Below, piece by piece: positions 1,568-58,577 of a stretch of DNA of 64,000 nucleotides. The stretch covers positions 124,001-188,000 of IMG/VR virus record IMGVR_UViG_3300042261_002390. One strand, written 5' to 3'. Below the pieces are notes generated by a model that was given only the letters and a program-made list of their open reading frames with translations, was not told where the DNA came from and did not search any database. Every line of letters starts with the position of its first letter. The stretch's first letter is position 1. A program made the translations under genes and the position numbers.

Positions 1568-1576
1568 TAATTTGTA

Positions 1577-1585
1577 GTATTTATA
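1577..1585 (+). promoter_or_regulatory. Putative phage late promoter GTATTTATA
   Basis: Intergenic, 15 nt before the ATG at 1601. The motif recurs before many genes. Confidence 0.65.
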
Positions 1586-2246: not shown

Positions 2247-3026
2247 ATGGCAAATTCACAATTATACGGAAATACATATAAAATCCCTTCTGAGGTCTTA
2301 AAAACTATTCAAGCAACACTTGTATCAAAACCATCGGGCGAAGGTGTCAGAAGGGCTAAATTCATGCTTAAAAACGGTGTTATCTCTTATCAGGCAATGA
2401 AGAGATTAAAAAATTATTTTGATTATTATAATCCACAAACTGACGATAAAATTCAATACGCATTAGCAGGAGGTGATTTAATGAAATCATTCATTGATAG
2501 AACATTAAATGCTAATAGGGATGCTGTTCAACGTTCGAAAGATGTACGTCGAGATATGACAACTAATCCAAATTCAGAGTTGAAACCATATCAAACACCC
2601 AGACTTAATGAAAATGAGAAAAAAAAGAAGCCTAAAGAAAACGCTATTGCAGTAATTGTTGACAATGATAATAAAATTTTGTTGTTAAAACGTGCAGATG
2701 AACCCGGGACTTGGATGCCGAATAAATATGCTTTTGTTGGTGGTGGTATTGAAAAGGGTGAAACTCCTGAAGAAGCATGTAAACGTGAAATACAGGAAGA
2801 AACAAAACTAGATATTGATAAATTTATCAAATCGTTCAGTATTCAAAAGCATGAAAGTAGTATTGAGTATGTTTTCGTATGTAGATATACTGGTGAACCT
2901 ACTGATGTTGAATTAAACGATGAGAATACTAATTATGGATGGTTTAGTATTTCTGAAATAGAATATCTTGATATTGTACCTCATTTAATGGAATATTTGA
3001 CAATTATTTTTAAAGAATATGAATAA
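2247..3026 (+). CDS. Nudix hydrolase with N-terminal phage domain
   Basis: Nudix box GGGIEKGETPEEACKREIQEETKL in the C-terminal half. An RLNENE linker precedes the domain. Confidence 0.9.
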   Translation: MANSQLYGNTYKIPSEVLKTIQATLVSKPSGEGVRRAKFMLKNGVISYQAMKRLKNYFDYYNPQTDDKIQYALAGGDLMKSFIDRTLNANRDAVQRSKDVRRDMTTNPNSELKPYQTPRLNENEKKKKPKENAIAVIVDNDNKILLLKRADEPGTWMPNKYAFVGGGIEKGETPEEACKREIQEETKLDIDKFIKSFSIQKHESSIEYVFVCRYTGEPTDVELNDENTNYGWFSISEIEYLDIVPHLMEYLTIIFKEYE

Positions 3027-3029
3027 TGT

Positions 3030-3290
3030 ATGGTTGGAGTTTATTTAATATTAAATATTAATACTAATAAAGTGTACGTCGGAAGCTCAGTTAATATTGA
3101 AAGGAGGATAAGAAAACATTTTAATGGTGAGAAATCGCCGAGAGCTAAATTAACCAATGAAATTGTTTTAAAAATTAGAAAACAGTGGGCTGATAAGGAA
3201 TATAGTTGTAAAGAATTAAGTTTAATGTATAAGATACATGAAAGAACTGTTAAAAAAATAATTTATCGTGAAAGATGGAAACAAATATAA
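3030..3290 (+). pseudogene. Internally deleted GIY-YIG homing endonuclease
   Basis: GVYLI...VYVGSS...RR..KH N-terminus joined directly to a C-terminal HTH (AKLTNEIV...TVKKII.RERW). The segment carrying the catalytic Glu is absent. Confidence 0.65.
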
Positions 3291-3333
3291 TTTGTATTTA
3301 TAATAAATAAATTTAAACTAAAAACGTAATACG

Positions 3334-3573
3334 ATGAGTAGACTTGAAGAAATTAATGCACAATACAGAACTTGTAGTACTGCAAGGAATGATTACAACA
3401 ATAATGACGAATATACCGCAGGTAACCCTGACGCATTATCAACTGGTGATGAAAAAGGTAAGGGTGAAGTGAATGGTCAGGTTGGTAGTGCGACAGACAT
3501 TAAAGTAAGACAAACTTTGATGACCAAAAATAAATTTAATAAGAATAAAGAATACAACGCAGGTACTGCATAA
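3334..3573 (+). CDS. Hypothetical protein
   Basis: 79-aa ORF, GTATTTATA at 3294-3302, coupled to the next gene (TAATG). Confidence 0.75.
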   Translation: MSRLEEINAQYRTCSTARNDYNNNDEYTAGNPDALSTGDEKGKGEVNGQVGSATDIKVRQTLMTKNKFNKNKEYNAGTA

Positions 3574-4523
3574 TGTCAGAAGAAAAGAAAATACTGTTCG
3601 AAAACATTAAAATTTTCCGTCACATAATAAATGAGGCTGTTGGCGGTGATGCTGCTATTCTTGATGCTATTGAGAATCATGAATGGATATATCTATATTA
3701 TGCCGGGGATGAAAATAGTGCAAAAGGATATCGTACAATCAGACCCTATGTTTTAGGTACAAACAAAAGTGGTAATAAGGTATTAAGAGCATGGCAAGAC
3801 AATAAAAAAAATAGCTGGCATTTTGATAATAAACCAACTAGAGATGATAGCAAGTATCATGATTATTGGACTGACCATGAGGGTGAAAAACCGGGATGGA
3901 GAATGTTTCGTGTTGATAAAATATCCCAAATATTACCGATTGGTAGAAAATTTGTGGATAGTAATGGGAATGTCATGATTCCTTCAGGATATCGTGAAGG
4001 TGACGATGATAACATGACATCAATAATTGCATATGTTTCAACAGATAGAGAACCTGAAGAAAAAATAACACATGCATTTGATGCTGCAGTTGGCGAACCT
4101 GAACAAACAAGCGGAATTAATTGGAATAGTATTGCAAGGGGTAATAAAAATCGAAGAAAGATAACCAAATACGATGTTGAAACTTTAAGTAGATTAGCTA
4201 CTAAATTTCATAAAAGAAGTAAAGGAAATTATGTGGTAGTTATTGATGATAAAAACCAATTTCAATTATTAACTCAAAACCAATTAAATAGTTCAGCTAA
4301 AAAGGGCATTACAATTCCAGATAATGCTATTGTTGGTAGATTGTCAAATTTATATGATACTTTAGTTCGAGGAAAAAATGAACCTGTCGATGATACTTGG
4401 TTCAAAAATCAAAAACAAGGCAGTCAAATGCCGGAACGAACAACACAAGAACCTCAAAACGAAATAAAGGAAAATAATTTACCATCAATTCCATTCGATA
4501 AAAAGTCTTTTTTCAAACAATAA
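3573..4523 (+). CDS. WYL-domain protein
   Basis: IYLYY...GYRTIRPYVLG...VLRAWQ...GWRMFRVDKI fits the WYL SH3-like pattern. No HTH seen. Confidence 0.75.
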   Translation: MSEEKKILFENIKIFRHIINEAVGGDAAILDAIENHEWIYLYYAGDENSAKGYRTIRPYVLGTNKSGNKVLRAWQDNKKNSWHFDNKPTRDDSKYHDYWTDHEGEKPGWRMFRVDKISQILPIGRKFVDSNGNVMIPSGYREGDDDNMTSIIAYVSTDREPEEKITHAFDAAVGEPEQTSGINWNSIARGNKNRRKITKYDVETLSRLATKFHKRSKGNYVVVIDDKNQFQLLTQNQLNSSAKKGITIPDNAIVGRLSNLYDTLVRGKNEPVDDTWFKNQKQGSQMPERTTQEPQNEIKENNLPSIPFDKKSFFKQ

Positions 4524-11950: not shown

Positions 11951-12101
11951 TAAAATTCAAAAAAAGAATATCAATAGAGATTTGAGAAAGTTTAAATACT
12001 TGACATCTATGGGATATACTATATTGTATCTATGGGAATATGATTTAAAACACAATTTAAATGAATGTAAAAATAAATTAAATAGACTGTTATATGAATA
12101 A
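11946..12101 (+). pseudogene. C-terminal relic of a Vsr/DUF559-like endonuclease
   Basis: Start-less frame FDKIQKKNINRDLRKFKYLTSMGYTILYLWEYDLKHNLNECKNKLNRLLYE*. The RD..K...L...GY.IL.LWE.D pattern is typical of Vsr-like nucleases. Not in the ORF track. Confidence 0.75.
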
Positions 12102-13719
12102 GATAAAAAATTTTATAGCTGATTTAAAAACCAAACCGTTTATCAAATCAATGATAAATGATTTGAATGCTGAAGTATATGTTGTTGGTGGTGCAACTAG
12201 AGACCTTATTCTCAATAAAAATAACAAGGATATTGATTTATTAATTAGAAAAATACCAATCGATGTGTTAATATCTCATTTAAAAAATTATGGTAAATTA
12301 GATATTGTGGGTAAATCATTTGGAGTTATTAAGTTTATTGATTCAGATGGCGTTGATTATGATATAGCATTGCCTCGCCGAGAAAAACCAACAGGTGAGG
12401 GTGGACATAAAGACTTTGAAATTCAGAGCGATGAAAATTTACCGATTGAAGTGGATTTGAGTAGAAGGGACGCTAAACTTAATGCAATGGCAATTGATTT
12501 AAACAACGAAAAATTTGTTGACCCTTTGGGTGGTTTGGACGATATTCAAAATAAACAAATATCTGCTGCAAATCCTAATGCATTTTCAGATGACCCACTT
12601 CGTATGTTGAGAATGATTGGTTTTGCAAGTCGATTTGGATTTACGATTGAACCCAGAACAATGGAAATGATTCAAAAAAATGCTGAAAGTATTAAGAGAA
12701 TACCTGCTGAAAGAATTATCGAAGAATTCAAGAAGATTATCGAAAAGGGTAATCCTAGAATTGGTGTTGAACTTTTAGTATCTACCGGGTTATTTAAACA
12801 AATATTTGGTAATGAAATCAAGCAATCACAAATAGATAAGCGTGATTTTGAAAGCGTTAAATCTATGGCTGAGTTTTTATTTTTGATGATGTATGATGTT
12901 GTTCAAAATCCGTCACAATTTTATTTAAGTAAATTTAGTACGGAAGATGCTTTAAGGGATAAAAACTATAAAGAAATAAAAGCATTGGAGTTGGCATTTG
13001 CAAATACCAATAATAATCCAGTGGCTACAAGGTCAGTTGCACATAACATGTATGTAATGTCACCTGTTTCTTTGGAGAGTTCAATTCTTCCTTCTGAGAT
13101 TAAAACTGCAGCACAGGATTTGCTTTCAGGTAGATATCCTAAAACAGTTAATGAATTGGCTGTTAATGGCGGTGATTTAATGCAGTTAGGATTAAAAGGT
13201 AAAGAAGTTGGTGATATGCAAAAGTCATTATTGCTTAAAGTTTATGGCGATAAAGTTCGTAACGATAAGAATAGTTTGCTTGCTGTTGCTAAAGGTGAAG
13301 AACCAAACAACTTAAGTGAGGTTGATGCTAATATTGATAAGAATGTTCTTTATAGTGCAGTTGTGCTTGACGATGAGTCACGTAGCAAATTATTGAAAGT
13401 GGTTCAACCTATGATACCTGATGGTTGGGAAGTTATAGCGCATCACATGACAATCAAAATGGGTGCAATAAACCCCGAAAATCGGGGTGATTTGAATACC
13501 GAAGTAACGCTTGATGTTATTGATTACGCTATCGATGATATGGCATTTGCTGTTGGTGTAAGTGGTTATCCATCCAACAATAAGAAGCCTCATATTACTA
13601 TTGCAATTAATAGACTTGAAGGTGCTAAACCAGTAATGTCTAATAATTTAACTGATTGGAAACCATTAGGTTTTCCATTAAAACTGAAAGGAATTGTTAC
13701 TGAAATTAAACGAAATTAA
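12094..13719 (+). CDS. cca: CCA-adding/poly(A) polymerase-family nucleotidyltransferase fused to a C-terminal 2H phosphoesterase
   Basis: VVGGATRD..KDID, DLSRRD..NAMA, DPLGG..D, FSDDPLRMLR. The C-terminal domain has two HxT motifs (HHMTI, PHITI). Confidence 0.88.
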   Translation: MNKIKNFIADLKTKPFIKSMINDLNAEVYVVGGATRDLILNKNNKDIDLLIRKIPIDVLISHLKNYGKLDIVGKSFGVIKFIDSDGVDYDIALPRREKPTGEGGHKDFEIQSDENLPIEVDLSRRDAKLNAMAIDLNNEKFVDPLGGLDDIQNKQISAANPNAFSDDPLRMLRMIGFASRFGFTIEPRTMEMIQKNAESIKRIPAERIIEEFKKIIEKGNPRIGVELLVSTGLFKQIFGNEIKQSQIDKRDFESVKSMAEFLFLMMYDVVQNPSQFYLSKFSTEDALRDKNYKEIKALELAFANTNNNPVATRSVAHNMYVMSPVSLESSILPSEIKTAAQDLLSGRYPKTVNELAVNGGDLMQLGLKGKEVGDMQKSLLLKVYGDKVRNDKNSLLAVAKGEEPNNLSEVDANIDKNVLYSAVVLDDESRSKLLKVVQPMIPDGWEVIAHHMTIKMGAINPENRGDLNTEVTLDVIDYAIDDMAFAVGVSGYPSNNKKPHITIAINRLEGAKPVMSNNLTDWKPLGFPLKLKGIVTEIKRN

Positions 13720-13755
13720 GTCTAAATAAGTAGTTGAATTCATTAAAGATATTTT

Positions 13756-14394
13756 ATGATTAGCAGAAATATATATTTTGAAGAAAACAAGTTTAAAAGA
13801 TTTGGTGATTATATTGAGTATCATTTACTTAATGAGATAGCTAAGAAATATGGTATAACTAACGAAAATGGCGTTGAAGTAAACGTGTTTAATGTAAATC
13901 GAAAGGGGAAAAAATTTAAGCCATTCGATATTTTTGTTAGGAACATAAAAAAAAGAATTGAAGTAAAAGGTGATTACATGACAGTTCGATTGGGTAATAT
14001 TATTGTTGAAACTTATGGACACGATGGATTTTCAGGGATATCTACCACAAAAGCAGATTATTGGGTTTTTGTTACTGGCTTTTATAAAATTTGGATAACA
14101 CCAAATGAATTAAAAAAATACATTACATTAAGAAATTTAAGCGTCGGAGATGTTAGAGGCAATGGGGATAATTATACAAAAAAAGCATATAAAGTAAGAC
14201 ATGACGATTTTATTGACTATATTTTAAATCTTAACGATAAAAATATTGGACTAGTTGTTCCGATAGATAGAAATAGTCCGTTATATTGGCATAAATGTAT
14301 TCCTTTTAATTATAGTCTTAGAAAATATCATCAAGAGGCTAATATTTTTGAAGAACGTAAGGATGAATTATTTAAAATAAAAAGAAGTAGATGA
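13756..14394 (+). CDS. PD-(D/E)xK endonuclease-like protein
   Basis: E..L...FDIFV...IEVKGD...GNIIVE...SGI.TTKADYW. Confidence 0.7.
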   Translation: MISRNIYFEENKFKRFGDYIEYHLLNEIAKKYGITNENGVEVNVFNVNRKGKKFKPFDIFVRNIKKRIEVKGDYMTVRLGNIIVETYGHDGFSGISTTKADYWVFVTGFYKIWITPNELKKYITLRNLSVGDVRGNGDNYTKKAYKVRHDDFIDYILNLNDKNIGLVVPIDRNSPLYWHKCIPFNYSLRKYHQEANIFEERKDELFKIKRSR

Positions 14395-14420
14395 AAAAAA
14401 GATTAGTAGCATTTGAATGA
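14391..14420 (+). pseudogene. Orphaned original 5' end of the HAD gene (MKKRLVAFE*)
   Basis: ATGA overlap with the upstream stop. The peptide aligns with RKRLIAIDFD at the start of 15493..16098. Confidence 0.65.
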
Positions 14421-14422
14421 TA

Positions 14423-15436
14423 TTAAATATATTTAAAAAAATATCCTTTAGTGTGATTTCTTTCACCACTAATAACTCTTCTAATACATTTGTCTTTAAT
14501 TTTCATAATATCACATAATTCATGTATATTATTGAAAGTGCGAATGTATTGTTTTGTATTATAGTCAAACATTTCTATTTTACGTAGCTTAGATAATCTA
14601 TTATATGTGCCTTGTCGATATTCTCTTAATGTTTGAAATATTTCATATTTTCTGCTTAGTCTTAATGTTTCAGAATCATAATACATTTCATTTTTTATTA
14701 TATTGAGGTCGTGATATGAATAATAAAAAATTTTTGAGATGTAATTATTACTTGACTGATATACTGTATTAGTTAATTTAGTGTTATTCGATATGTGATA
14801 TCTTAAAAAATCATGTTTAATTTGTTTTAATAATGCCTCCGACCCGATTATCTGAAATCTTAGTCTTCCTTTTTTTTGATTTTTTTCGTTAGTAATTGAC
14901 CCGTCACCATCAAAAACACCTCTAATAAAATGCCAAAAATATTCATTAGGTATATTTGGCATTTCACAGGTGAACGATTTGTTGGGATATATGCCCAATT
15001 TATTTAAATCATCAACAATTTCTTTAGATGCTATTTGTAATGAATATCTAGTATATGTTTTATTTGTTCTTTTATCAAAAATATCGTATTTGGCTAATTT
15101 ATGTTCAGACTTGAGTTCTCGTTTAAATATTTCAACAAGCTCACTGTCTTTAGATGTAAAAGTTAATTTAAATTTATTAACATATCCGTCAGATATGATT
15201 AATCCTAGTATGTAAGCTTTATTTTTATTGTTGATTTCTTTAAAAAAATTTATATCAATGCTGTGTTTTCTATTATTGCCGTCGTGAGATTTATTATCTA
15301 ACGTATATCCATATTTTTTCAACCGATTTCCGATTGTTGATGGTGATACGTCACCAATTAAGTTAGCTATTTTATTTAATGAGTATTTATCTTTAAAATA
15401 ATAATTAAATATTTGTTCTATGTTTATGTTTTTCAT
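14423..15436 (-). CDS. Free-standing LAGLIDADG homing endonuclease with HTH/NUMOD1-like domains
   Basis: AYILGLIISDG and HFIRGVFDGDGSI motifs, NUMOD1-like C-terminus (IRTFNNIHE...TKGYFFKY), own minus-strand GTATTTAT at 15455-15462. Confidence 0.9.
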   Translation of the reverse strand: MKNINIEQIFNYYFKDKYSLNKIANLIGDVSPSTIGNRLKKYGYTLDNKSHDGNNRKHSIDINFFKEINNKNKAYILGLIISDGYVNKFKLTFTSKDSELVEIFKRELKSEHKLAKYDIFDKRTNKTYTRYSLQIASKEIVDDLNKLGIYPNKSFTCEMPNIPNEYFWHFIRGVFDGDGSITNEKNQKKGRLRFQIIGSEALLKQIKHDFLRYHISNNTKLTNTVYQSSNNYISKIFYYSYHDLNIIKNEMYYDSETLRLSRKYEIFQTLREYRQGTYNRLSKLRKIEMFDYNTKQYIRTFNNIHELCDIMKIKDKCIRRVISGERNHTKGYFFKYI

Positions 15437-15492
15437 AAATTTGCATTTTTAAAAATAAATACTTTGAGATTTAAAATTATTGGGTTTTGATT

Positions 15493-16098
15493 ATGGAAAA
15501 AAATAAAAATACTCGAAAACGTCTAATAGCCATCGATTTTGACCAATGTTTGGTCAACACCCCTGAAGAAATTCAAGGTAAGAAAACTTGGGAAGAAGTT
15601 AAAGGTGTTCCTTATCCGCATAATGGATGGTGGGGTAGGAAAGAAAGCTTAGATTTGGATGTTTTTGATATAAAACCATATCCTAACGTACTGTCTGTTT
15701 TAAGAAAAGAAAGCAGTAGAAATGATACGTATGTTATTGTTTTAACAGCAAGAATGGAAAAATTGCGTCCATATGTGCAAGCAGTTCTTGATGCAAATAA
15801 CATTAGGGTTGATAAATTGGATATGAAAAGTGATAATAAAACAAAGGGTGAAAGAATATTGGCATATTTAGCTGAGATGCCTGAAATAAAAGAAATTTCA
15901 GTTTTCGATGACCAAGAAAAACATCTTGATTCGTATCGTGAAATTATAGATAAACTACCTAAAGGTGTTAAATTGAATATTTTTAAAACTGATGAGGGTG
16001 TGATTAATTTAGTTGAATCAAAAAATAAACTCAATCATATTATTTCTGATGAAATTGAAAATTTTTTTGATTGTATTTATATTAAAAAAATTCTATGA
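15493..16098 (+). CDS. HAD-family phosphatase (Swiss-Army-knife RNA-repair HAD-like)
   Basis: IDFD..LVNTP, WW...ESL, VLTAR, K, VFDD motifs. Confidence 0.8.
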   Translation: MEKNKNTRKRLIAIDFDQCLVNTPEEIQGKKTWEEVKGVPYPHNGWWGRKESLDLDVFDIKPYPNVLSVLRKESSRNDTYVIVLTARMEKLRPYVQAVLDANNIRVDKLDMKSDNKTKGERILAYLAEMPEIKEISVFDDQEKHLDSYREIIDKLPKGVKLNIFKTDEGVINLVESKNKLNHIISDEIENFFDCIYIKKIL

Positions 16099-16910
16099 TT
16101 GACATGAGATATAAACCACGCTTTCTTCCGCAAGTTTCTGCACCATACAATATTGTATTAGAGAGGCTTGATGAAGAAGGTGTTGACTATCATTTAGTTG
16201 AAGTAGACCCAAATGAATTAAAACCAATACAGGGTATTGTATTTAGTGATGATATTGGTAATGTGAAATTGGATGATTTCACCCCAATTTATATCGATAG
16301 CGAATACAATATACTTGATGGACATCACAGGGCGATGCGTGCTTTATTTGATGGAGTTCCGTTAAAAGCAGTGATGCTTGAATTAAACAGTAAGGATGGT
16401 AGCCGAGTTTTAAATAAAATTCAAGACATTTATGAATATGAAGAAATGCGTGGCTTGGAAGAAGTTGAAATGCAGGATACTATTAATTATTATCAAGGTG
16501 ATGAAAATCAATTTTTAACTTCATTAGATGAAGATAATGCTGCAGTACAGAACGAAAATCCAAGTCTAAATCAACAAAAAATCATTGCTTATCGAAAAGA
16601 ACCAATTAAGGAAAATTCTGTTGTTGGTAATTTCTTCACATTAAACCCTTTAGATGGTTTCAGTAAATATGAGATTGAATTTGATAATCTTCTCGATACT
16701 GATGCATTAGGTGTGATGTATAAAGATAGTCAAGACCCGGTTGACATATTGTCAAAAATTTGGTTTCCTAATGTTAATTTTGAGGAAATTAGTAAACAAT
16801 ATGATGTGCCTGCAGCTAATTTGAAAAGTAAAGCAGTTGCAGAAAAAGCTAATAAAATGGGTTTTGATGGAATTAAATACGGTGATAAATTAATACAAGG
16901 ATTAAAATAA
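16095..16910 (+). CDS. ParB/Srx-like domain plus C-terminal ADP-ribosyltransferase-like domain
   Basis: VDPNELKPIQ..PIYID...ILDGHHR (ParB-like). AYR..GNFFT..Y.I.FDNLLD..GFDGIKY weakly resembles ART-PolyVal. Confidence 0.6.
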   Translation: MIDMRYKPRFLPQVSAPYNIVLERLDEEGVDYHLVEVDPNELKPIQGIVFSDDIGNVKLDDFTPIYIDSEYNILDGHHRAMRALFDGVPLKAVMLELNSKDGSRVLNKIQDIYEYEEMRGLEEVEMQDTINYYQGDENQFLTSLDEDNAAVQNENPSLNQQKIIAYRKEPIKENSVVGNFFTLNPLDGFSKYEIEFDNLLDTDALGVMYKDSQDPVDILSKIWFPNVNFEEISKQYDVPAANLKSKAVAEKANKMGFDGIKYGDKLIQGLK

Positions 16911-21199: not shown

Positions 21200-21231
21200 G
21201 TTTATTAGTATTTATAGTAAAATTTGTTATA

Positions 21232-35773: not shown

Positions 35774-35806
35774 AATTATCAGTATTTATAGTAAATTTGA
35801 TTAACA

Positions 35807-48767: not shown

Positions 48768-48862
48768 ATTAAATCGAACATACTAATATTGTATGTTCTT
48801 TTTATTTATTATCGTTTTTTTGCTTCATCTAAGTATTTATAAACAACTGAATAAATAGTGAA

Positions 48863-58532: not shown

Positions 58533-58541
58533 TATAAATAC
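58533..58541 (-). promoter_or_regulatory. Putative late promoter GTATTTATA (minus strand) for the SLT gene
   Basis: TATAAATAC on + strand, upstream of 58369. Confidence 0.6.
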
Positions 58542-58577
58542 TATAAAATATGGTTTTCTGTACAATGTACGTTTTTA

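What the first reader, a model, noticed from the sequence alone, without database searches (positions are those of the whole stretch)
14391..15560. Homing endonuclease inserted into the HAD gene's DxD codons and supplied a replacement N-terminus
Seen: a micro-ORF MKKRLVAFE* (14391-14420), translationally coupled to the upstream gene by ATGA, stops where the antisense LAGLIDADG gene ends. Beyond the endonuclease the HAD gene restarts with a paraphrase, RKRLIAIDFDQCL, in different codons and with QC where HADs usually have GT. Inferred: intron-less homing into a catalytic motif, with a recoded 5' end that both rescues the gene and destroys the cleavage site.
Basis: partly seen in the sequence, partly recalled or inferred. 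Interest (0 to 1): 0.65.

Follow-up and report, generated by a model that had tools for sequence, protein, structure and literature searches.

The report
Homing endonuclease cassette overwrote phage phosphatase gene
A selfish homing-endonuclease gene entered this uncultured jumbo phage together with a foreign copy of its neighbouring RNA-repair phosphatase gene, leaving the first 26 bases of the old gene as a stranded micro-ORF; related phages show independent stubs of the same kind and the stages of the endonuclease's decay, so it is a clear new example of a known process.

Summary
At 14391-14420 a 9-codon ORF (MKKRLVAFE*) overlaps the stop of the upstream 212-aa gene by ATGA. Its first 26 nt are the 5' end of a HAD_SAK_1 phosphatase gene. 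In HEG-free relatives (L005/L006) the same upstream gene runs straight into an intact HAD gene, and homology to the window stops at 14416, inside the first Asp codon of DxD. An intact antisense LAGLIDADG gene follows (14423-15436), then a 56-nt spacer and a complete HAD gene (15493-16098).

This HEG family sits head-to-head with a HAD gene in 12 of 13 distinct loci from other uncultured phages. Four other loci carry independent resident-gene stubs, three of them broken at the same Asp codon. Others show HEG decay to 24 codons, to a short stub, or to nothing. HEG-linked HAD genes are mosaics: about 100 nt of foreign 5' end on a resident-type body. In the window nearly the whole HAD gene looks imported.

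Best explanation: intronless homing with one-sided, illegitimate repair. Cleavage at or near the DxD codons is inferred, not shown. The long N-terminus is a natural allele class, not a bespoke recoding.

The closest known analogues are fungal mitochondrial endonuclease ORFs that carry foreign gene termini.

The parts
13756..14394 (+). Resident upstream gene (212 aa, phrog_13596, function unknown). Its TGA stop overlaps the micro-ORF start (ATGA at 14391-14394).
   Evidence: It is 84% aa and 85% nt identical to the upstream gene of HEG-free loci L005/L006, where the same ATGA leads into an intact HAD gene.
14391..14416 (+). Remnant of the resident HAD gene: 8 codons plus GA of the first Asp codon.
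   Evidence: It matches the L005 HAD start at 23 of 26 nt, but matches the paralogous stretch of the window's own HAD gene at only 14 of 26 (hand count from the sequences printed). The blastn alignment with L005 ends at 14416.
14391..14420 (+). Micro-ORF MKKRLVAFE*, probably still translated by stop-start coupling. No function is proposed for it.
   Evidence: It is the only match to the family's N-terminal pattern in six frames of the window.
14417..14422 (.). Left junction filler ATGATA between the remnant and the HEG stop. Similar ATGA or ATGATT strings abut the HEG stop in L009, L010 and L015.
   Evidence: Its origin is not resolved; it may be a leftover of an earlier insertion.
14423..15436 (-). 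Free-standing double-motif LAGLIDADG homing endonuclease, 337 aa: N-terminal HTH, two LAGLIDADG domains, C-terminal NUMOD-like DNA-binding tail.
   Evidence: Pfam PF14528 at 35.4 bits (cut-off 22.5); PF22083 at 24.5 bits, just under its cut-off of 27. phrog_4645 'endonuclease' at 3e-43. Both motif Asp residues are invariant in 20 homologues. The AF2 model has pLDDT 87.7. Foldseek top hits are LAGLIDADG enzymes. dN/dS against orthologues is 0.17-0.26.
15437..15492 (.). Divergent HEG-HAD spacer. 15437-15463 is the window's degenerate copy of a conserved near-palindromic box that in relatives contains TATAAATACT. 15482-15510 is a conserved leader, read here as the N-terminal extension.
   Evidence: Conserved across L008, L009, L011, L013, L015, L107, L110, L112 and L113. 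TATAAATACT occurs 5 times in the window against 0.82 expected. Its role as a promoter is inferred.
15493..16098 (+). Complete, apparently functional HAD_SAK_1 phosphatase gene of foreign origin. DxD codons are at 15535-15543.
   Evidence: PF10307 at 30.6 bits (cut-off 25.6). All 13 invariant family residues are present. The AF2 model has pLDDT 92.6, and its fold matches HAD phosphatases including Pnkp1 and the T4 Pnkp 3' phosphatase. Against L002/L004/L005 dS is 1.3-1.45 and dN 0.20-0.23, against 0.58-0.83 and 0.05-0.10 in the flanks.
16049..16098 (+). Right edge of the divergent block. From here on the window is nearly identical to L004. The T-run 16062-16068 is one T shorter than in relatives, which removes the usual stop and adds 9 residues up to the ATGA overlap with the next gene.
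16095..16910 (+). Resident downstream gene (271 aa), 85-93% aa identical to its counterparts in L002 and L004.

Best explanation
The window records a homing event by a free-standing LAGLIDADG homing endonuclease gene (HEG). In related uncultured jumbo phages this HEG normally lives in the spacer just upstream of, and divergent from, a HAD_SAK_1 phosphatase gene in an RNA-repair gene cluster.

Shown:
- The HEG is present or absent at this one locus across relatives.
- It travels with the spacer, a leader and the 5' part of the adjacent HAD gene.
- In this genome the resident HAD gene, formerly start-stop coupled to the 212-aa upstream gene, survives only as its first 26 nt.
- The working HAD gene is a more divergent, imported allele.

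Inferred: during a mixed infection the enzyme cut the HEG-free HAD allele in its 5' end, at or close to the DxD codons. The downstream end was resected and found homology only near the 3' end of HAD, so almost the whole gene was copied from the donor together with the spacer and the HEG. That left the micro-ORF.

The imported allele differs from the remnant at 12 of 26 aligned positions. At the positions 4-12 nt upstream of the first Asp codon it carries the states typical of HEG-linked alleles, which plausibly makes it immune to its own endonuclease.
For: Empty site: L005/L006 have the same upstream gene and ATGA followed by an intact HAD gene. Homology to the window ends at 14416 and resumes at 15524 at lower identity.

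Linkage: HEG orthologues (47-69% identity) lie head-to-head with a HAD_SAK_1 gene in L008-L015, L019-L022, L107 and L110-L113, next to at least four different upstream gene types.

Independent stubs of the resident gene, each in a different upstream context:
- L013/L014: MKRLAVFD.
- L086: MKRLAVYD.
- L029: MTKIKRLIAFDF.
- L112: MIKRL.
L086 and L029 align contiguously into the intact HAD start of HEG-free loci (L092, L027). For L013 and L112 the alignment to a HEG-free locus (L052, L038) covers the upstream gene and stops 7-40 nt before the stub end.

HEG decay series: the full HEG is in L107, only 24 codons remain in L053, and a short stub remains in L029, which comes from the same sample as L107.

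Co-conversion: L008 (HEG+) against L037 (HEG-free) is 57% and 50% identical over the first 120 nt, then 100%, 86%, 76% and 84%. L110 against L038 is 55% and 52%, then 88%, 83%, 89% and 78%. HEG-linked alleles are scattered over the HAD tree, needing 12 changes, at least 5 of them forced by supported branches.

Window mosaic.

HEG under purifying selection with catalytic residues intact.

Site differences: HEG-linked and HEG-free alleles differ most at -12, -10, -9 and -4 relative to the first Asp codon (Fisher p 1e-4 to 2e-3). All four stubs that reach these positions carry the HEG-free states at -12 and -4.

Precedent: one-sided homing with illegitimate repair at microhomology is documented for T4 (PMC2988022, citing Parker et al. 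1999).
Against: Neither the donor of the window's HAD allele nor a HEG-free genome of the same strain is sampled. The nearest HAD relatives are only 72% identical and all are HEG-free, so the extent of the import rests on relative divergence alone.

Left junctions are not all at DxD. L112 breaks 15 nt into the gene, and L008, L009, L107, L110 and L113 break at or before the start. The L029 junction lies in a patch of microhomology. The clustering at the Asp codon could therefore reflect microhomology rather than the cut site.

The codon association is phylogenetically underpowered: only 4 well-supported independent contrasts, sign test median p 0.25.
Confidence: 0.8

Rival explanations
1. The HEG cassette arrived by homing or recombination, but the breakpoints at the first Asp codon mark a microhomology hotspot for illegitimate joining (TTGAT-like strings next to the HEG stop and in the leader), not the cleavage site. 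The real cut site would lie elsewhere in or near HAD.
For: ATGA or ATGATT strings abut the HEG stop in L009, L010, L015 and the window. The L029 junction lies in a 14-nt patch of near-identity between the HAD DxD region and HEG codons 6-10. L112 and the stub-free loci have other left junctions. Free-standing T4 endonucleases often cut at a distance from their genes (PMC2988022).
Against: A stub cannot extend past the break, so the cut must lie at or downstream of the longest stub. The foreign 5' tracts in L008 and L110 end about 100 nt further on. That still brackets the cut within roughly codons 9-40 of HAD. The allele differences concentrate directly beside the breakpoints.
Confidence: 0.3
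2. An in-situ tandem duplication of the HAD 5' end came first, and the HEG inserted between the copies later. The two copies then diverged in place, so nothing was imported.
For: L086 has a stub, a leader and an intact gene with no HEG between them. It could be read as a pre-insertion state.
Against: The stub is 88% identical to L005, like the upstream gene (85%), but only 54% identical to the paralogous part of the working gene. The working gene's synonymous divergence from relatives is twice that of both flanks. HEG-linked 5' ends in different phages resemble each other more than they resemble the bodies they are attached to.
Confidence: 0.05
3. The interruption is an intron (group I or II), so that MKKRLVAF is joined to DFDQCL... 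at the RNA level.
For: Joining 14416 to 15537 would formally restore an open frame.
Against: No Rfam intron model matches 13700-16200 even at E <= 1. The stretch that would be removed contains a paraphrase of the N-terminus preceded by its own ATG and a conserved leader. An uninterrupted relative (L004) uses exactly that long start.
Confidence: 0.02
4. The LAGLIDADG protein is domesticated, for example as a WhiA-like regulator of the divergent HAD promoter, and no longer acts as a mobile nuclease. The stubs would then be old scars.
For: The architecture of an HTH plus LAGLIDADG domains resembles WhiA, which appears among the fold hits. The gene is conserved next to one promoter region and has dN/dS about 0.2.
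Against: Both catalytic Asp residues are invariant, whereas WhiA has lost them (own knowledge). Presence/absence polymorphism, truncated copies and 5'-end mosaics are the signature of an active gain-decay-loss cycle.
Confidence: 0.08

Closest known systems
Free-standing homing endonucleases of T4-like phages and 'intronless homing' (SegF, SegG, SegB, MobE); one-sided homing with illegitimate double-strand-break repair (PMC2988022; Parker et al. 1999 as cited there)
   Same: A stand-alone HEG between genes, present or absent among related phages. Flanking gene sequence is co-converted with it. Immunity comes from sequence differences in the neighbouring gene rather than from disruption of the site. 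When one flank lacks homology, junctions form at microhomology.
   Different: The enzyme is LAGLIDADG, whereas T4's are GIY-YIG or HNH. It is antisense and shares a divergent spacer with its target gene. A translated stub of the overwritten gene is left behind. The host is an uncultured jumbo phage. Cleavage has not been demonstrated.
Mitochondrial mobile endonuclease ORFs (mORFs) that carry a foreign gene terminus: Allomyces macrogynus atp6; Glomus atp6, atp9, cox2 and nad3 (PMC3630166)
   Same: The endonuclease ORF (LAGLIDADG in three of the four Glomus cases) arrives with a foreign copy of one end of the host gene, which takes over. The native end stays behind as a remnant that is closer to the gene of sister taxa than the inserted copy is.
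   Different: Here it is the mirror image: the 5' end rather than the 3' end. The HEG is on the opposite strand and is not fused in frame. In the window almost the whole gene was replaced, not only a terminus. The genome is a phage, not a mitochondrion.
HEG-split phage genes (Aeh1 nrdA/mobE, T4 gene 60/mobA, phage 25 gene 43; PMC2988022) and nuclease genes at recombination boundaries in ICP1 phages (PMC10448857)
   Same: A HEG lies at a functionally critical, conserved part of an enzyme gene and marks a boundary of genetic exchange.
   Different: The HAD gene is not split into two working halves. One complete copy works and the 26-nt stub is dead.
The homing-endonuclease gain, degeneration and loss cycle (Goddard and Burt model; own knowledge)
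   Same: The related loci show every stage: empty site, intact HEG, C-terminally truncated HEG (267 aa in L020), a 24-codon stub, a shorter stub, and a leader-only scar.
   Different: The cycle is seen across metagenomic phage contigs rather than in a dated host phylogeny, so no rates or order of events can be given.

Membership tests
LAGLIDADG homing endonuclease (monomeric, two-motif) | Two LAGLIDADG motifs, each ending in a conserved acidic residue | tested here: met
   The motifs ILGLIISDGY and IRGVFDGDGS are present. D83 and D178 are invariant in 20 homologues.
LAGLIDADG homing endonuclease (monomeric, two-motif) | Profile match above the curated cut-off | tested here: met
   PF14528 scores 35.4 bits against a cut-off of 22.5, in two stretches.
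LAGLIDADG homing endonuclease (monomeric, two-motif) | Tandem alpha-beta-beta-alpha-beta-beta-alpha fold | tested here: met
   The AF2 model has pLDDT 87.7 and the expected order of helices and strands. Foldseek hits include the TliVMA intein endonuclease, I-Tsp061I, bI3 maturase, I-SceI, I-OnuI and I-DmoI, at E 1e-8 to 1e-5.
LAGLIDADG homing endonuclease (monomeric, two-motif) | Site-specific cleavage of an 18-22 bp site leaving 4-nt 3' overhangs | not testable with these tools
   Needs an in vitro assay.
Free-standing (intronless) homing element | Own ORF, not inside an intron or intein | tested here: met
   The ORF is antisense with its own start. There is no Rfam intron hit and no Hint/intein domain.
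Free-standing (intronless) homing element | Presence/absence polymorphism at a fixed locus among relatives | tested here: met
   The HEG-free allele is in L005/L006. Orthologues lie at the same place in 12 other loci. On the HAD tree the HEG state needs 12 changes.
Free-standing (intronless) homing element | Co-conversion of flanking sequence with the HEG | tested here: met
   There are sharp 5'-end mosaics in L008 against L037 and in L110 against L038. The window's HAD is about 70% identical to relatives against 85-93% in the flanks.
Free-standing (intronless) homing element | The enzyme cuts the HEG-free allele and spares its own genome | not testable with these tools
   There is only indirect support: allele differences at -12 to -4, and stubs that carry the HEG-free states.
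Mitochondrial-type mORF gene hybrid | Endonuclease ORF plus a foreign copy of a gene end, with the displaced native end retained | tested here: met
   The stub is at 14391-14416 and the foreign HAD at 15493-16098. This is the 5'-end mirror image of the cases in PMC3630166.
Mitochondrial-type mORF gene hybrid | The mORF lies on the same strand as the host gene and is often fused in frame with it | tested here: not met
   The HEG is on the opposite strand.
HAD_SAK_1 (PF10307) / HAD phosphatase | Profile match above the cut-off, and a HAD Rossmann-like fold | tested here: met
   PF10307 scores 30.6 bits against a cut-off of 25.6. The AF2 model has pLDDT 92.6. Foldseek hits are HAD phosphatases, including Pnkp1 of the Pnkp1/Rnl/Hen1 RNA-repair complex and the T4 Pnkp 3' phosphatase.
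HAD_SAK_1 (PF10307) / HAD phosphatase | Motif I DxDx(T/V) and the other catalytic motifs | tested here: met
   D15 and D17 and all 13 family-invariant residues are present. The Thr position is Cys, as it is in several intact relatives (P0004, P0019, P0080, P0091, L084, L089, L097).
HAD_SAK_1 (PF10307) / HAD phosphatase | Phosphatase activity on RNA 3' or 2',3' ends | not testable with these tools
   This is inferred from the family name, the fold neighbours and the adjacent CCA-adding / 2H-phosphoesterase gene.
Group I/II intron or intein | Ribozyme core, or an in-frame Hint domain | tested here: not met

The most novel reading that the evidence does not exclude
The HEG, the spacer and the first 35-40 codons of HAD form a recurrent mobile module. 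It repeatedly overwrites motif I and the stretch just after it in a phage RNA-repair phosphatase. In HAD enzymes that stretch is where the substrate-specifying cap is inserted. The endonuclease would then be more than a parasite: it would be the vehicle that shuffles active-site and cap variants of an RNA-repair, possibly anti-defence, enzyme among jumbo phages. Its 22-bp target would be written in the codons for the catalytic nucleophile.
Probability: 0.2. Interest if true: 0.7.

Novelty: new variant of a known kind. Interest (0 to 1): 0.55.

Why it matters
- It gives a sequence-level, multi-genome record of how a free-standing homing endonuclease enters a genome that lacks homology on one side. 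One-sided homing of this kind is documented experimentally in T4 (PMC2988022); my four literature searches turned up no described natural phage example with such a stub, though they were not exhaustive.
- It extends the 'mobile ORF with a foreign gene end' pattern from fungal mitochondria to phages, and to the 5' end of a gene.
- It warns annotators that short ORFs coupled to a preceding gene can be scars of overwritten genes.
- It shows that a phage enzyme gene can be a chimera whose N-terminal catalytic motif has a different history from its body.
- It nominates a new LAGLIDADG enzyme family with a narrowly bracketed candidate target, which can be tested directly.

Tried and rejected
There is no population or transcript evidence.
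- Closer HEG-free relatives of the window: searches with the 212-aa upstream protein in viral contigs and metagenome contigs gave only distant relatives, at most 48% identity over a core domain. A second sample (L115) holds the identical HEG-bearing sequence.
- GenBank phages: blastn found nothing. tblastn found only relatives at 35% identity or less for the HEG and 31% or less for the HAD, the latter only in uncultured huge phages.
- PDB by sequence: nothing significant for either protein. Fold searches were needed.
- Sigma-70 promoter and terminator scan: no enrichment over shuffles.
- Rejected idea: that HEG-linked alleles differ in the DxD codons themselves. Those columns are the same in both classes, and the exact string TTTGATTTTGA is kept in 3 of 12 HEG-linked alleles.
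- Weakened idea: that the stub ends (TTTGA to TTTGACTTT) directly report a 4-nt 3' overhang cut. The L029 junction sits in microhomology and L112 breaks elsewhere.
- Not followed: the exceptional loci L016, L017, L018 and L023, where a 58%-identical HEG with spacer and leader lies about 4.8 kb from the HAD gene.
Full report
**What is in the window.**
- The window lies in a 246-kb IMG/VR virus record, part of a 340-kb JGI contig. It is AT-rich, and all genes around the finding are on the + strand except one.
- Gene 12094-13719 encodes a CCA-adding/poly(A)-polymerase-type nucleotidyltransferase with a weak 2H-phosphoesterase-like tail.
- Gene 13756-14394 encodes a 212-aa protein of unknown function (phrog_13596).
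- Its TGA stop overlaps an ATG at 14391. That ATG opens a 9-codon ORF, MKKRLVAFE, which stops at 14418-14420.
- Two bases later the antisense ORF 14423-15436 ends.
- After a 56-nt spacer, a 201-aa ORF starts at 15493.

**The two proteins.**
- The antisense protein is a two-motif LAGLIDADG enzyme. PF14528 scores above its cut-off, and an I-HmuI NUMOD-like tail scores just under its cut-off (24.5 against 27 bits). There is also a weak N-terminal HTH and a match to phrog_4645 'endonuclease'.
- In an alignment of 20 homologues both motif aspartates are invariant.
- A confident AlphaFold model (pLDDT 87.7) matches solved LAGLIDADG endonucleases and maturases.
- Pairwise dN/dS against seven orthologues is 0.17-0.26, so the protein is maintained by selection.
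- The downstream protein is a HAD_SAK_1 phosphatase (PF10307). It keeps all 13 family-invariant residues.
- Its model (pLDDT 92.6) matches HAD phosphatases, among them Pnkp1 of the bacterial Pnkp1/Rnl/Hen1 RNA-repair complex and the T4 Pnkp 3' phosphatase.
- The motif-I sequence DFDQC is unusual only at first sight. Relatives show G, A, S, D, K or Q at the fourth position, and several intact ones have Cys for Thr.

**The micro-ORF is a scar of the resident gene.**
- The word search found 108 HAD homologues. Two of the three closest start MKKRLIAFDFD and MKKRLVAFDFD.
- On contigs L005/L006 the same 212-aa upstream gene (84% aa identity) is followed, through the same ATGA overlap, by an intact 186-aa HAD gene.
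- blastn aligns L005 to window 13749-14416 at 85% and stops there, inside the first Asp codon. L005 then realigns from 15524 at 73%, so 13 nt of L005 match twice.
- Counting from the sequences printed, the stub matches L005 at 23 of 26 positions. It matches the paralogous part of the window's own HAD gene at only 14 of 26.
- The family's N-terminal pattern occurs once in six frames of the window, at 14391.
- No Rfam family, intron or otherwise, matches the region meaningfully.

**How much was imported.**
- Against L002, L004 and L005 the window's HAD gene is 65-77% identical along its whole length. The upstream gene is 85% identical and the downstream genes 83-93%.
- Synonymous divergence is 1.3-1.45 in HAD against 0.58-0.83 in the flanks. 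Non-synonymous divergence is 0.20-0.23 against 0.05-0.10.
- Among the three relatives, HAD is no more protein-divergent than its flanks: dN is 0.07-0.09 in both.
- High identity to L004 resumes near 16049, in the last 15 codons or so.
- The foreign block is therefore about 14417-16040: the HEG, the spacer and nearly the whole HAD gene, not only an N-terminus.
- On a protein tree the window's HAD is sister to the L002/L004/L005 clade (support 100), so the donor was a related lineage. It has not been sampled.

**The same element elsewhere.**
- The HEG has 163 homologues.
- In every orthologue locus I could read except one group, it lies head-to-head with a HAD_SAK_1 gene. These are L008, L009/L010, L011/L012, L013/L014, L015, L019/L022, L020, L021, L107-L109, L110/L111, L112 and L113.
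- The exception is L016, L017, L018 and L023, where the HAD gene is about 4.8 kb away.
- The gene on the other side of the HEG differs between loci: a 196-aa type, a 2H-phosphoesterase, a 167-aa type, and CCA fusions.
- The spacer between the HEG and HAD starts holds a conserved near-palindrome containing TATAAATACT. That 10-mer is enriched in the window (5 occurrences against 0.82 expected). A leader follows.
- In the window, L004, L013 and L020 the leader is read as an N-terminal extension. In L009 and L015 it is untranslated.
- The leader resembles the last codons of the 167-aa-type upstream gene, so the cassette may also carry a scrap of its original neighbour.
- L004 has the long N-terminus and the spacer but no HEG. 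The long start is therefore a natural allele class.

**Independent scars and decay stages.** Four other loci keep stubs of a resident, ATGA-coupled HAD gene next to the HEG or its remains.
- L013/L014: MKRLAVFD, abutting the HEG stop.
- L086: MKRLAVYD, followed directly by the leader and an intact gene, with no HEG.
- L029: MTKIKRLIAFDF, followed by a short 5' stub of the HEG.
- L112: MIKRL.
- The upstream genes differ between these loci.
- L086 and L029 align contiguously into the intact HAD start of HEG-free loci (L092 and L027). For L013 and L112 the alignment to a HEG-free locus (L052, L038) covers the upstream gene and stops 7-40 nt short of the stub end.
- L053 keeps only the first 24 HEG codons, identical to the full-length P0119. 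P0119 itself sits on L107, from the same sample as L029.
- Together with the 267-aa truncated copy in L020, the loci span the stages of empty site, intact HEG, truncated HEG, stub and scar.

**The N-terminus does travel with the HEG.**
- HEG-linked HAD alleles are scattered over the HAD tree: 12 changes, at least 5 of them forced by supported branches.
- Two HEG-linked genes have HEG-free sisters with near-identical bodies but unrelated 5' ends.
  - L008 against L037: 57% and 50% identity over the first 120 nt, then 100%, 86%, 76% and 84%.
  - L110 against L038: 55% and 52%, then 88%, 83%, 89% and 78%.
- L008's 5' end is 80% identical to those of L112 and L113.
- The crossover falls at the codons for the conserved GWWGRPES block.

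**Where the enzyme cuts (inference).**
- A stub cannot extend beyond the break, and the foreign tracts end about 100 nt into the gene. The cut is therefore bracketed to roughly codons 9-40 of HEG-free alleles.
- Four of five stubs end within 10 nt of each other, at or just after the first Asp codon.
- Across 15 HEG-linked and 54 HEG-free distinct alleles the DxD codons are identical in both classes. The strongest differences lie at -12, -10, -9 and -4 relative to the first Asp codon (p 1e-4 to 2e-3).
- For example, the Leu codon of (K/R)RL is CTN in 10 of 11 HEG-linked alleles and TTR in 32 of 46 HEG-free ones.
- The four stubs that reach these positions carry the HEG-free states at -12 and -4.
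- Phylogenetically independent contrasts all point the same way or show no difference, but there are too few to reach significance.
- Some junctions lie in microhomology.
- I therefore give about 0.55 to 'cleavage within about 12 bp of the first Asp codon', and about 0.8 to the overall homing-with-one-sided-repair account.

**Comparison with what is known.**
- Mechanistically this is intronless homing as defined for the T4 Seg and Mob enzymes. The one-sided, illegitimate repair is the kind shown experimentally for the td intron (PMC2988022).
- Structurally it mirrors the fungal mitochondrial mORFs that bring a foreign 3' end and strand the native one (PMC3630166).
- HEGs at exchange boundaries in phages have been surveyed (PMC10448857).
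- Four features are new here. The enzyme class, LAGLIDADG, is free-standing and antisense in a jumbo phage. The end affected is the 5' end, which includes the catalytic nucleophile codons. A stub that probably remains translationally coupled is left behind. And the record across many genomes is unusually complete.
- No isolated or annotated phage carries a close relative.
- I rate it a new variant of a known kind.

**Limits.**
- The donor and a same-strain empty site are not sampled.
- All related loci are metagenomic contigs.
- The promoter role of the spacer box is inferred.

Noticed in passing
window 16062-16098: The HAD gene's T-run has 7 T where L004, L005 and L002 have 8. This removes the usual TGA and adds 9 residues (DCIYIKKIL), ending in an ATGA overlap with the next gene. 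The former spacer is otherwise conserved. A contig from a second sample (L115) is identical, so this is probably not a sequencing error.
   Followed up: partly
window 1576-1585, 21207-21216, 35781-35790, 48832-48841 (all minus strand) and 58533-58542 (plus strand): TATAAATACT occurs 5 times against 0.82 expected. It resembles the T4 late-promoter box, and in related phages it sits inside the near-palindromic HEG-HAD spacer. It is a candidate promoter motif of this phage lineage.
   Followed up: partly
L008 626-1612; L009 1350-2162; L113 1-298: A second, distantly related LAGLIDADG ORF (about 29% identity to the window's HEG) lies two or three genes downstream of HAD in several related phages. 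The RNA-repair neighbourhood appears to be a hotspot for homing endonucleases.
   Followed up: no
L071 and L104 (upstream of the DxD at locus positions 2519 and 2513): In these phages the HAD domain is the C-terminal end of an open frame of more than 1000 residues that also holds the CCA-adding and 2H-phosphoesterase parts. This is a fused 'Swiss-army-knife' version of what are separate genes in the window.
   Followed up: no
window 16095-16910: The 271-aa downstream protein contains ILDGHHRAMRA, a ParB/sulfiredoxin-like DGHHR motif. It has no Pfam hit and only a weak PHROG match (phrog_2859).
   Followed up: no
window 13756-14394; L002 1159-1845; L004 45-548: The three different upstream gene types share SG..T(K/E).DYW and E.K motifs (phrog_13596). 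This suggests a common nuclease-like core, possibly PD-(D/E)xK. The core has many distant relatives in marine viral contigs.
   Followed up: no
L016, L017, L018, L023 (HEG at 3001-4005): Here a 58%-identical HEG keeps the spacer and a leader-like string but is not next to HAD, which lies about 4.8 kb away on the same contigs (L031-L034). The 3 kb on the spacer side has almost no ORF of 80 aa or more under table 11. This may be an ectopic copy or a rearrangement.
   Followed up: partly
L107 1678-2046 and 4545-6788; L010 2918-4663: In some related phages a response-regulator receiver-domain gene overlaps the end of HAD, and large ART-PolyVal-domain proteins lie upstream of the HEG.
   Followed up: no
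window 14417-14422; L009, L010, L015 and L112 left junctions: Short ATGA, ATGATT or TTAAATATAT-like strings lie between the upstream gene and the HEG stop. They could be nested leftovers of earlier insertions (start codons of older HAD alleles, or duplicated HEG 3' ends). This is unresolved.
   Followed up: partly
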